The notes beneath the pieces were generated by a model. The model saw only the letters and a list, made by a program, of their open reading frames with translations, was not told the origin of the DNA and did not search any database. From Diadema antillarum (taxonomy: Eukaryota), in NCBI RefSeq assembly GCF_040938485.1, contig NW_027271213.1:744001-808000 (forward strand): a stretch of 64,000 nucleotides of DNA, given 5' to 3'. Below, in pieces: positions 28,664 through 31,600 of this stretch. How positions within the stretch are numbered: the first letter of the stretch is position 1; each line of letters begins with the position of its first letter. Position numbers and translations under genes: made by a program.

Positions 28664-31600
28664 ATGAAAACACGTTTGTTTCTACTACTGGTGCTGGGAG
28701 TCGTGGGCAGCTGTGGGTTGAACCAGCCGGACGAAGCGGGTTCCCCAGAAGCCTGGAAGTCTCGTATCGCTGCAGTGCTTTTCCAAGGCCTGTGCCTATT
28801 TCTGATAGGCTTTGGAATCATGTGCATCTATTTTCTCTACCAGCCCGTCCCAGCCGGTTTTCCAGAACCCTGGAAATATCGTATGTGTACCGTGCTTTTC
28901 CGATGGTTTAGACTCAAGGTAGGTCTTAAGCCTCTTTTACACTTTCACGGATTGCTACACGGATGACCACGGATCGTCATCCGTGGTGTTCCGGCATGCA
29001 AAATATAAATTTCCCTCTCAATGCCGGTGTAAATACGATCCCAACTGTGTGTCTACACGGACAAGTATGGAGGCTTCACGGACAAATACTGTGCCTACAC
29101 GGACAAACAAGGAATGAACGCGGAGCACATCGGAAACGATACGGAGCTAACATGGATATCAAGGAAGGACACGGATGCAACTGGGTCACTTCGCGGTCCT
29201 TACACGGATATCCCCAAAATGTTGACAGATGACTTTTGTTTTGCTTTTGATACTTTATCATTTTCAGGCGACGTGCCTCAAGAGCTAAATAGCAAGCTCA
29301 CCAGAAAATCTGCAGCAGCGTACACACTTCTCTGCTTGTCGAAAAGATGCAATAAAATCTCTTTGTTGCAAACTGTCACTTTTCTGGAAAATCATGACAT
29401 AAACAAAGAAAAACTAAATAAAACAAATCGAAACACAAAAAAAAGCATGGAGGTGTGCGTGGATCACTTAAGTTTCTCAGACGACCACTATACGAACAGT
29501 ATGAGGGGTTGATGGCTGTACTGATGGGGGAAGATCTGAGCAAATATCTCTACGGACTATTTCTCTGGACTCTATGAGCTTGTATTGGCAAAGAACCCTA
29601 ATTTTTCATCCCGGATGGAGCCGATGCTAGTACGGACGTCCCGATGTCTTCACGGATTGTCCCGGAATGAGTACGGACGCAACACGGAGCAGCCGATGCC
29701 TACAAGGAAGGAATACGGAGGCAACACGGAGTAGACGGTGCCAACAAGGAAGAGTTCATATTGATTTTCATCCGTGATGTTCGGGATGAAAAATTAAAGC
29801 CCCTTTTACACTTTCACAGATCGCATCACGGATGACCACGGATCGTCGATCCGGGATCATCCGTACTGTTTCCGGATGACCGTGTTGACTCCGTGAAGTC
29901 ATCCGGCATTATCCCCGATCATCCTTCATGTCCGCGGAAAAAATTAAGCTTGCTTAATTTTTCATCCCGGTCATCACGGATGAAAATCAATACGAACTCT
30001 TCCTTGTTGGCACCGTCTACTCCGTCTTGTCTCCGTATTTCTTCCTTGTAGGCATCGGCTACCCCATGTTGCCTCCGTACTCATTCCGGGACAATCCGTC
30101 AAGACATCGGGACGTCCGTATTAGCATCGGCTCCATCTGGGATGAAAAATTCGTGTATTTTGCCAATGCAACCTTATAAAGTCCATGAAATTTGTTCACA
30201 TCTTCCCCCATCAGTACAGCCATCAACCCCTCATACTGTTCGTATAATGGTCTCCTGAGAAGCTTCAGTGATCCACACACATTTCCTTGATGTTGTTTTT
30301 TTTTTGTGTGTGTTTTGATTTGTTCTGTTTTGTTTTGCTTTGTTTATGCCATGATGTTCCCGCATAATGAGAGTTTGCAACAAGAGATTTCCCGTGATGT
30401 CGACAAGCCGAGGCGCATGTAGGCTGCTGCAGAATTTCTGGTGTGCTTGTTATTAGCTCTGGAGGCATGTTGCCCGAGAATGATAAAGTATCAAAAGCAA
30501 AAGTAAATGTCATCTGCCAACATTTTAGGGATATCTGAGAAAAGAAGGCAATGGGACCCAGTTGCATCCGTGCTCTCCGTGTCGTTTCCGCTGTGGTCCG
30601 CGTTCGTTCCTTGTCTGTCCGTGTAGGCACCTTACTTGTCCGTGTAGCCTCCGAACTTGTCCGTGTAGACATCCAGTTGGGATCGTATTCACACCGGCAT
30701 TGAGAGGAAAATCGATATTTTGCGTGCCGGAACACCACGGATGACAATCCGTGGTCATCCGTGAAGCAATCCGTGAAAGTGTAAAAGGGGCTTAGCAAGC
30801 TTGATTTTTTCCGCGGACATGCTGAACGATCAACAATAATGACAAAAGACTTCACGGAGTCAATTCAGTACGGGTGATCCCGGATCGACAATCCGTGGTC
30901 ATCCGTGATGCGATCCGTGAAAGTGTAAAAGAGGCTTTATGCCGCAGTCACATAGACATCCCGGATCACCCCGGGCCACCCCGGATCTGATCTAGGGTGA
31001 TGCCGTGTAGCTGCTGTGTTCGTCCGTGTATATGTCGTGTTTGTCCGTGTAGACGCCGAGCTCTTCCGGCCTTATCTGTGTAGCTGCCGTGCTGATACCA
31101 TGTGTACAGTCATATCAACGCTCGTCGACACTTCTTCAAGGTCGAAACAATCCCGGGTCTCCCCGGAAATCCCCGGATCACCGTGTAGATCCTTGAGGAT
31201 CCGTGTTTATATGTGACTGGGGCCTGAAGCCTGATGTCCCTGCCATATATTAACACGGATCCTCAAGGATCTACACGGTGATCCGGGGAGATCCAGGATA
31301 GTTTCGACCGCGATAATCAACACTGCTGCTACATGGCAGCCACACGGACCATCCCGGATTGCTCCGCCAACACAGCAACCCCCGGATGACGCCGGATGTT
31401 TTTGACCTCCAAAAGTTGCCGTGTTGACCTCATGGATGTCCCCGGATCTACACGGACATACACGGATGTCCAAGGATGTCCAAGGTGTCAACATGGATCT
31501 CTCCCCAGATCAGATCCGGGGTGGTCCGGGATGATCCGGGATGTCTATGTGACCGGGGCTTACCATAATCAAGACGAATTGCATGTTTATCACCAGGGGC

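What the first reader, a model, noticed from the sequence alone, without database searches (positions are those of the whole stretch)
28664..28918. Duplicated membrane-anchor module may flip the lipase to the other side of the membrane (paralogs B and C)
Seen: exon 1 is 255/252 nt versus 138-147 nt in A, D and E, because a 117 bp (B) or 114 bp (C) unit is tandemly duplicated in frame: NQPDEAGSPEAWKSRIAAVLF versus [21 protein letters not shown], also visible at DNA level (accagcc at 28722 and 28839). This gives two hydrophobic segments; the first now looks like a cleavable signal peptide (MKTR-LFLLLVLGVV-GSCG) and the second is a ~25-residue helix. Established: AADAC is a single-pass type II ER protein with a lumenal catalytic domain. 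Inference: signal peptide plus stop-transfer (or a hairpin) would put the catalytic domain in the cytosol, giving a topology-switched enzyme class from a simple intra-exon duplication.
Basis: partly seen in the sequence, partly recalled or inferred. Interest (0 to 1): 0.78.

Follow-up and report, generated by a model that had tools for sequence, protein, structure and literature searches.

The report
Doubled membrane anchor in urchin lipase genes
Two neighbouring sea-urchin (Diadema) genes of the AADAC/NCEH1 lipase family carry a real, conserved in-frame doubling of their membrane-anchor exon, which by standard membrane-insertion rules should move the enzyme from the ER lumen to the cytosolic side; nobody has yet shown that the doubled exon is expressed.

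Summary
The window is Diadema antillarum and holds five AADAC/NCEH1-like (Abhydrolase_3) genes, each with four coding exons. Exon 1 is 255 nt in B and 252 nt in C, against 138-147 nt in A, D and E, because a 114/117-nt unit is tandemly duplicated in frame (62/88 nt identical; z=14 against codon shuffles).

The doubled exon is intact in six distinct gene copies from two species: same ATG, same AAG|GTAGGT donor, no frameshift. The catalytic exon is under purifying selection (pN/pS 0.18).

- **For:** segment 1 looks like a signal peptide. Segment 2 is as hydrophobic as the paralogs' single anchors. The 30-45 residues after it carry +3..+5/+5..+8 net charge, against about 0 (max +4) in 29 single-anchor homologues. 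This fits a cytosolic catalytic domain.
- **Against:** no RNA evidence could be obtained. All six RefSeq models start in exon 2 and omit exon 1. Copy 1 shows no significant amino-acid constraint (omega about 0.74). The sequons and cysteines of the catalytic domain are uninformative.

No other protein with a doubled module was found, but that search was insensitive. Verdict: a new variant of a known family, with a plausible but untested topology switch.

The parts
28664..28918 (+). Gene B exon 1, 255 nt / 85 codons, containing both anchor modules
   Evidence: ATG in aaaATGa context, in-frame stop 9 nt upstream, donor AAG|GTAGGT
28697..28784 (+). Duplication copy 1 (core 88 nt)
   Evidence: (62/88 identical to copy 2, z=14)
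28814..28901 (+). Duplication copy 2 (core 88 nt), the copy that keeps the family motif [15 protein letters not shown]
   Evidence: best match to exon 1 of A and D
28676..28720 (+). Hydrophobic segment 1 (codons 5-19, LFLLLVLGVVGSCGL), signal-peptide-like: n-region MKTR, 10-residue h-region, small residues at -3/-1
   Evidence: AF2 helix 2-19
28766..28840 (+). Hydrophobic segment 2 (codons 35-59), predicted transmembrane helix
   Evidence: summed scale -0.1 to -1.2 kcal/mol, like the paralogs' anchors; AF2 helix 28-59
28919..28924 (+). Exon 1 splice donor GTAGGT, identical in all six gene copies
32495..32514 (+). Last 20 nt of intron 1 (pyrimidine tract + AG), 100% identical in six copies while the rest of the intron is 87-91% identical
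32515..32767 (+). Gene B exon 2 (253 nt). Its first 22 codons lie upstream of the RefSeq start and are basic (KLFLRHRQRP). HGGG oxyanion motif near the end
32975..33038 (+). Gene B exon 3 (64 nt)
35845..36637 (+). Gene B exon 4 with GDSAGG, catalytic Asp/His region and stop; Abhydrolase_3
39371..39622 (+). Gene C exon 1, 252 nt / 84 codons, same doubled module
41560..41812 (+). Gene C exon 2
42031..42094 (+). Gene C exon 3
44061..44853 (+). Gene C exon 4
16750..16893 (+). Gene A exon 1 (single module), comparator; equals RefSeq protein P0005 of D. antillarum
48279..48416 (+). Gene D exon 1 (single module), comparator
59632..59778 (+). Gene E exon 1 (single module), comparator

Best explanation
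In the ancestor of Diadema genes B and C, a 114-nt piece of exon 1 was duplicated in tandem and in frame. The piece ran from inside the signal-anchor helix to just past the [13 protein letters not shown] motif. The ancestral promoter, start codon and MKT(R/K) N-terminus stayed in front of copy 1, so translation most likely starts there and gives a protein of 454 (B) or 453 (C) residues. Copy 1 has lost the C-terminal half of its hydrophobic core (IAFAYVLY-type became VGSCGLN) and its proline motif, and now resembles a cleavable signal peptide or a short first helix. Copy 2 keeps a full-length hydrophobic helix and the family motif. Inferred mechanism: segment 1 inserts with its N-terminus in the cytosol. 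The 15-residue acidic loop goes to the lumen. Segment 2 then acts as a stop-transfer. The alpha/beta-hydrolase domain, lumenal in AADAC and NCEH1, therefore stays on the cytosolic side, either as a two-helix hairpin or, if segment 1 is cleaved, as a type I protein. The basic stretch gained after segment 2 (RWFRLK...KLFLRHRQRP) would stabilise that orientation. Shown: the duplication, its conservation, the intact ORF and splice signals, the hydrophobicity and charge pattern, and selection on the enzyme domain. Inferred: use of the first ATG, membrane insertion, and orientation.
For: - Duplication significant.
- Six distinct intact copies in D. antillarum (window B and C; L005) and D. setosum (L003), with conserved ATG, donor and frame.
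- No indel in copy 1 and one in-frame indel in copy 2, while the noncoding flanks show 16 indel blocks per 131 substitution events. About 3 indels are expected in copy 1 (P about 0.05) and about 5.6 in the whole exon (P about 0.02).
- The exon 2 acceptor region is 100% conserved upstream of the RefSeq start, so exon 2 behaves as an internal exon.
- The spliced frame is open, at 454 and 453 codons.
- Catalytic exon pN/pS 0.18; catalytic motifs intact; Abhydrolase_3 E=2e-43.
- Segment 2 is as hydrophobic as the paralogs' anchors, and segment 1 has signal-peptide architecture.
- Net charge of the 30/45 residues after segment 2 is +3..+5/+5..+8, against +0.45/+0.14 (sd 1.4/1.7, max 4) in 29 single-anchor homologues. 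The N-flank is +1..+2 and the loop is -1..+1.
- None of about 55 full-length homologues examined has a second hydrophobic segment.
Against: - No RNA run holding exon 1 was found. The single holder is low-coverage, DNA-like contigs with no splice joints.
- All six RefSeq models (P0123, P0124, P0121, P0122 at 347 aa; P0001, P0125 at 351 aa) begin at the first Met of exon 2 and skip exon 1. No gene is called over window 28664 in the public annotation.
- Copy 1: omega about 0.74 (p=0.30), no third-position excess, and a substitution density (0.20/site) like the flanks (0.22).
- The charge gain lies 20-45 residues after the helix. The first 15 residues are not unusual.
- B/C keep 2-3 N-x-S/T sequons in all copies.
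No SignalP or DeepTMHMM was available.
Confidence: 0.45

Rival explanations
1. Exon 1 is no longer part of the mature message. Transcripts start in intron 1 or exon 2 and translation begins at the first Met of exon 2, as in the RefSeq models. This gives an anchorless 347-351-residue soluble enzyme, and the doubled exon is a slowly decaying relic. The catalytic domain would still be cytosolic in this case, but not through the doubled anchor.
For: All six RefSeq models in two independently annotated species start in exon 2. Copy 1 and the first 22 codons of exon 2 both have pN/pS about 0.74, and copy 1's substitution density is like noncoding DNA. No transcript-derived protein fragment with exon 1 is in the databases.
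Against: ATG, frame, donor and exon 2 acceptor are intact in six copies, although copy 1 and copy 2 have diverged about 33% since the duplication. There is a deficit of indels. The RefSeq start may simply reflect failure to align the divergent N-terminus. The databases also hold no transcript-derived protein for paralog A, so they are blind to Diadema RNA.
Confidence: 0.22
2. The doubled exon is translated but the catalytic domain stays lumenal, by one of two routes. Either segment 1 fails to engage the translocon, so segment 2 works as the usual type II signal anchor behind a 40-residue cytosolic extension. Or segment 1 is cleaved as a signal peptide and segment 2 is not retained, giving a soluble lumenal or secreted enzyme. 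The duplication would then be nearly neutral, or would change only anchoring.
For: B/C keep two sequons (NQS, NHT) in all six copies, one of them rare in other family members. The 15 residues flanking segment 2 give no charge bias. Copy 1 is weakly constrained. Family anchors are only marginally hydrophobic on the summed scale.
Against: Segment 1 has a strongly hydrophobic Leu-rich core preceded by K/R and emerges first from the ribosome. Segment 2 is as hydrophobic as the paralogs' anchors, which do integrate. The extra +5..+8 charge after segment 2 is hard to reconcile with translocation of that side. Conservation of the sequons among sequences that are 90-95% identical carries little weight.
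Confidence: 0.2
3. Mixed or dual topology: a fraction of molecules insert each way, as reported for other type II enzymes such as CD38.
For: There is precedent for type II/type III dual orientation of an ectoenzyme (PMC13092349, abstract). The local (15-residue) charge bias is weak, and segment 1 is short.
Against: Nothing in the sequence specifically indicates it. The two closely spaced hydrophobic segments normally insert as a pair.
Confidence: 0.08

Closest known systems
AADAC (arylacetamide deacetylase) and NCEH1/KIAA1363, vertebrate ER lipases/esterases
   Same: Abhydrolase_3 fold, HGGG and GDSAG motifs, short basic N-terminus, hydrophobic anchor followed by a PxP...PW motif, and a small gene with the anchor in exon 1. 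Paralogs A, D and E in the same window have exactly this single-anchor layout.
   Different: B/C carry two anchor modules in tandem. The known proteins are single-pass type II with a lumenal active site (PMC9229287, PMC12078129). B/C are predicted to have the catalytic domain on the cytosolic side.
Hormone-sensitive lipase (LIPE), the cytosolic member of the same GDSAG/HGGG hydrolase family
   Same: Related catalytic domain, stated in PMC9229287. It works on the cytosolic side, as predicted for B/C.
   Different: HSL has no membrane anchor and has N-terminal and regulatory domains that B/C lack (PMC9229287).
11beta-HSD1 / 50-kDa esterase (AADAC) anchor-topology work (Frick et al. 2004, J Biol Chem 279:31131; only the title was seen, in the reference lists of PMC12078129 and PMC1891437)
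   Same: By its title, this work indicates that the N-terminal region of this family's anchor carries the determinants of lumenal orientation. That is the feature altered in B/C.
   Different: That work concerns engineered or point changes in a single anchor. Here a natural duplication adds a whole second segment. I could not read the paper, so its details are not used.
CD38 type II / type III dual topology
   Same: It is a type II enzyme whose catalytic domain can face the cytosol (PMC13092349, abstract).
   Different: CD38 has the same polypeptide in two orientations. There is no duplication and the fold is unrelated.

Membership tests
AADAC/NCEH1-like (HSL-type Abhydrolase_3) hydrolases | Match to Pfam PF07859 Abhydrolase_3 above the curated cut-off | tested here: met
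   B exon 4 alone: E=2e-43, 149 bits (cut-off 25). RefSeq B model P0123: E=1.4e-55.
AADAC/NCEH1-like (HSL-type Abhydrolase_3) hydrolases | HGGG oxyanion motif, GDSAG nucleophile elbow, and catalytic Asp and His regions | tested here: met
   YLHGGGL, GDSAGG, DVLRDDG and AFHGI are present in B and C and in all six related copies.
AADAC/NCEH1-like (HSL-type Abhydrolase_3) hydrolases | Closest relatives are annotated AADAC/NCEH1-like proteins of deuterostomes | tested here: met
   Top hits are echinoderm, amphibian and fish AADAC-like / AADACL4 / NCEH1-like proteins.
AADAC/NCEH1-like (HSL-type Abhydrolase_3) hydrolases | Single N-terminal signal anchor (type II) | tested here: not met
   B/C have two hydrophobic segments in exon 1, whereas about 55 homologues have one. 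This concerns the architecture only, not the catalytic family.
AADAC/NCEH1-like (HSL-type Abhydrolase_3) hydrolases | Lumenal, N-glycosylated catalytic domain | not testable with these tools
   Sequons are present (2-3) but not conserved across the echinoderm family. There is no conserved cysteine pair.
Cleavable ER signal peptide (segment 1) | Basic n-region, 7-15-residue hydrophobic h-region, small uncharged residues at -3 and -1 | tested here: met
   MKTR / LFLLLVLGVV / GSCG|L in B. The same layout holds in five of six copies. Ds_2 has W at -1 but has an alternative VVG|S site. This was judged by rule only.
Cleavable ER signal peptide (segment 1) | Prediction by a trained method (SignalP/DeepTMHMM), or experimental cleavage | not testable with these tools
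Expressed protein-coding exon (exon 1 of B/C) | Transcript evidence for the exon 1-exon 2 junction | tested here: inconclusive
   Only one run held part of the stretch. It behaves as low-coverage DNA contigs and shows no splice joints. RefSeq models omit the exon.
Expressed protein-coding exon (exon 1 of B/C) | Purifying selection on the encoded peptide | tested here: inconclusive
   Copy 2: omega 0.38 (p=0.03). Copy 1: omega 0.74 (p=0.30). The indel deficit gives P about 0.02-0.05.

The most novel reading that the evidence does not exclude
A natural, evolutionarily fixed topology inversion. An ER-lumenal lipase family member was re-oriented to the cytosolic face by tandem duplication of its own signal anchor. 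The first copy degraded into a signal-peptide-like segment, and the juxtamembrane region gained positive charge as a secondary adaptation. The result is a membrane-tethered cytosolic AADAC-type lipase in Diadema. Intact single-anchor paralogs next door in the same array serve as built-in controls.
Probability: 0.42. Interest if true: 0.62.

Novelty: new variant of a known kind. Interest (0 to 1): 0.45.

Why it matters
AADAC and NCEH1 are lumenal enzymes, and how they reach their lipid substrates is debated. A close relative naturally turned to the cytosolic face would give a matched pair, A/D against B/C in one gene array. That pair could be used to test how anchor architecture and flanking charge set the orientation of this enzyme family, and how a compartment switch can evolve in one mutational step followed by tuning. 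There is also a practical point: the public gene models for these six genes in two Diadema species probably lack their first coding exon.

Tried and rejected
- **RNA evidence.** The look-up of sequencing runs gave one run, not on record as RNA. Read laying showed only short DNA-like contigs, mostly on the transposon copies, and no splice joint. This is uninformative, not negative.
- **Word search with exon 1** (47-149 aa targets): nothing found.
- **Region search with A's residues 1-50:** only the query itself.
- **Full phmmer search of exon 1 against 1.84 billion representatives:** two weak hits. P0127 is a single-module exon 1 fragment. P0126 is a repetitive metagenomic ORF with no retrievable DNA. 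The known paralogs A and D also fell below threshold, so absence of other doubled modules is weak evidence.
- **Cysteine and N-glycosylation patterns** of the catalytic domain as a compartment signature: there is no conserved disulfide or sequon in the echinoderm family, so these are uninformative.
- **Basic amphipathic helix after segment 2:** the hydrophobic moment (0.40-0.48) equals the family mean (0.43). I rejected this idea; only the charge differs.
- **Internal Met (GIMCIY) as start:** it would leave only about 7 hydrophobic residues and has no support, so I did not pursue it.
- **AlphaFold2 of exon 1 alone:** three helices at moderate confidence (pLDDT 69). This agrees with the segment boundaries but says nothing about topology.
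- **Pseudogene reading of B/C:** rejected. The frames are intact and pN/pS of the catalytic exon is 0.18.

Full report
**What the window is**

The best protein hits to the last exon of gene B are echinoderm AADAC/NCEH1-like proteins. RefSeq protein P0005, 'arylacetamide deacetylase-like [Diadema antillarum]', matches paralog A at 100% over four exons. Its public locus lies on contig JBFRCO010000325.1 of GCA_040938485.1. The window therefore comes from the long-spined sea urchin D. antillarum.

It carries five genes of this family on the + strand, each with four coding exons. Pfam assigns them to Abhydrolase_3. The HGGG, GDSAGG, RDDG and FHG motifs are intact.

**The observation**

The internal repeat is real.
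- An 88-nt core is 70% identical at an offset of 117 nt.
- 62 matches were observed, against 35.5 +/- 1.8 (max 45) in 2000 codon shuffles, z=14.
- C shows the same repeat at offset 114.
- Exon 1 lengths are A 144, B 255, C 252, D 138 and E 147 nt, all ending in phase 0.

The two copies are 65-69% identical in DNA, while the exon 1 sequences of different paralogs are about 50% identical. The duplication therefore happened within the B/C lineage. It predates both the B/C gene duplication and the split of the two Diadema species. The ancestral unit was 114 nt, and B later gained one extra codon.

**Conservation**

Through the 90% cluster of the D. setosum hit, I found RefSeq entries for all the related genes and fetched their loci. 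The doubled exon is present and intact in six distinct copies:
- window B and C;
- two more in D. antillarum, L005:7087-7338 and L005:21029-21280 (L004 repeats the latter);
- two in D. setosum, L003:3515-3766 and L003:15975-16226.

All six keep the ATG in an aaaATG context, the frame, both hydrophobic segments and the AAG|GTAGGT donor.

Further points on constraint:
- Copy 1 has no indel in any copy, and copy 2 has one in-frame codon. The aligned noncoding flanks have 16 indel blocks per 131 substitution events. That predicts about 3 indels in copy 1 and about 5.6 in the exon (P about 0.05 and 0.02).
- The last 20 nt of intron 1 are identical in all six copies, while the rest of that intron is 87-91% identical. 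Exon 2 therefore behaves as an internal exon, although the public models start inside it.
- With consensus splice sites the frames are open, at 454 codons for B and 453 for C. I joined the exons only inside a script to check the frame. The joined sequence was not printed and was not sent to any search or fold tool.
- The catalytic exon has pN/pS 0.18, so these are working genes.

**Where the evidence is weak**

- Copy 1 is barely constrained at the amino-acid level. There are 17 nonsynonymous and 8 synonymous events, omega about 0.74, p=0.30, and no third-position excess. Copy 2 gives omega about 0.38, p=0.03.
- Copy 1's substitution density (0.20 per site) is close to that of the flanks (0.22). 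This fits a fast-evolving signal peptide, but equally fits an untranslated leader.
- All six RefSeq models begin at the first Met of exon 2. They are 347 aa in D. antillarum and 351 aa in D. setosum. No gene is called over 28664 in the public annotation.
- I could not obtain transcript data. The only run holding part of the exon behaves as low-coverage DNA contigs.
- The protein databases contain no transcript-derived fragment with exon 1, but they contain none for paralog A either.

**Predicted topology**

Segment 1 (residues 5-19) has a basic n-region (MKTR), a 10-residue Leu-rich core, and G-S-C-G with small residues at -3 and -1. Compared with the ancestral anchor seen in A, the C-terminal half of the hydrophobic core has been replaced by small or polar residues. 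That is the usual difference between a signal anchor and a cleavable signal peptide.

Segment 2 (about residues 35-59) scores -0.1 to -1.2 kcal/mol over 19 residues on a summed biological hydrophobicity scale. This is like or better than the single anchors of the echinoderm paralogs. The scale values were recalled from memory, so the figures are approximate. AlphaFold2 on the six-sequence exon 1 alignment gives helices 2-19, 28-59 and 70-84 at pLDDT 69.

Charges:
- N-flank: +1 to +2, plus the amino terminus.
- Loop between the segments: -1 to +1.
- The 30/45 residues after segment 2: +3..+5 / +5..+8.
- 29 single-anchor homologues measured from the homologous position: +0.45 (sd 1.4) / +0.14 (sd 1.7), with a maximum of +4.

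The gain comes from RWFR(L/R)K at the end of exon 1 and KLF(L/M)RHRQ(R/S)P at the start of exon 2. It lies 20-45 residues from the helix, and the first 15 residues are not unusual.

Under sequential insertion and the positive-inside rule (general principles; see PMC8379923), segment 1 goes in with its N-terminus cytosolic. Segment 2 then stops transfer, and the hydrolase domain stays cytosolic. If segment 1 were ignored, the charge balance around segment 2 would still not favour the family's usual orientation.

**Comparison with what is known**

AADAC is a type II ER glycoprotein with a lumenal active site. The N-terminal 33 residues of NCEH1 target it to the ER, and its catalytic domain is lumenal by selective permeabilisation and protease assays (PMC9229287; PMC12078129). 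A 2004 paper (Frick et al., J Biol Chem 279:31131) links the topological determinants of the AADAC ('50-kDa esterase') N-terminus to those of 11beta-HSD1. I saw only its title, so I use it as a lead and not as evidence.

B/C are members of the catalytic family but depart from its single-anchor architecture. None of about 55 full-length homologues examined has a second hydrophobic segment. A full phmmer scan of 1.84 billion representatives found no other doubled module. That scan did not recover even paralogs A and D, so the absence is weak evidence.

**Verdict**

The duplication is real, old relative to the B/C split, and maintained as an open, spliceable exon in two species. The topology switch is the most likely consequence if the exon is translated from its first ATG. 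My estimates are about 0.65 that the exon is translated from that ATG, and about 0.7 that the domain is cytosolic given that, so about 0.45 overall. If instead the RefSeq starts are right, the enzyme would be anchorless and also cytosolic. A lumenal catalytic domain is therefore the minority outcome either way.

This is a new architectural variant of a known enzyme family. It is interesting as a natural topology experiment, but it is untested and confined to one urchin genus.

- N runs (13512-13640, 15955-16120) were left alone.
- Spliced models were searched exon by exon, by reference.

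Noticed in passing
window 32581.. (B) and 41626.. (C); P0123, P0124, P0121, P0122, P0001, P0125: All six public RefSeq models of the B/C-type genes in D. antillarum and D. setosum start at the first Met inside exon 2 (347/351 aa). They omit the conserved doubled exon 1, so they are probably truncated annotations.
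   Followed up: partly
L005 and L004 (D. antillarum contigs JBFRCO010000070.1 and ...142.1) vs window: D. antillarum holds at least one further B/C-type gene pair on other contigs. Its synonymous divergence from the window's B (pS 0.16) is larger than B's divergence from D. setosum (0.12). So these are not simple alleles; they reflect an older segmental duplication, gene conversion or assembly haplotigs.
   Followed up: partly
P0024 (D. antillarum paralog elsewhere in the genome): This single-anchor family member has no positive charge before its anchor (MSIS...) and RRIR directly after it. By the positive-inside rule it might be inverted through charge alone.
   Followed up: no
P0122 (L005 gene, B-type): Its C-terminus is ...FIKKYL, a KKXX-type di-lysine ending, where the other five copies have ...IEKYL. 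Such a motif would work only on a cytosolic tail. It may well be chance.
   Followed up: no
window 41803-41822 (C exon 2 donor); also L005 C-type and L003 second gene: C-type genes carry a 10-nt insertion (tcaggtcagt) at the exon 2 donor. It creates a new GT donor and changes the last codons (GHS instead of GHI). It is shared by D. antillarum and D. setosum.
   Followed up: partly
window 39228-39333: A tandem duplication of about 53 bp lies in the upstream region of C (also in the L005 C-type copy). It is absent from the B-type copies and from D. setosum.
   Followed up: no
window 20633-22793: Tandem array of 8 copies of a 273-bp unit (92% matches), partly G-rich, between genes A and B.
   Followed up: no
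window 49201-50143: Tandem array of 6 copies of a 158-bp unit (90% matches) in intron 1 of gene D.
   Followed up: no
P0126 (ENA metagenome assembly ERZ21867824, no DNA retrievable): A 227-aa ORF made of three tandem units of about 48 aa is weakly similar (E=4.6e-5) to the region spanning loop, segment 2 and the PxP motif. Its origin and meaning are unknown.
   Followed up: partly
L001:1-790 / L003 upstream of 9947: The first D. setosum B/C-type gene also has a foldback transposon inserted in intron 1 shortly after the exon 1 donor, as in window gene B.
   Followed up: no
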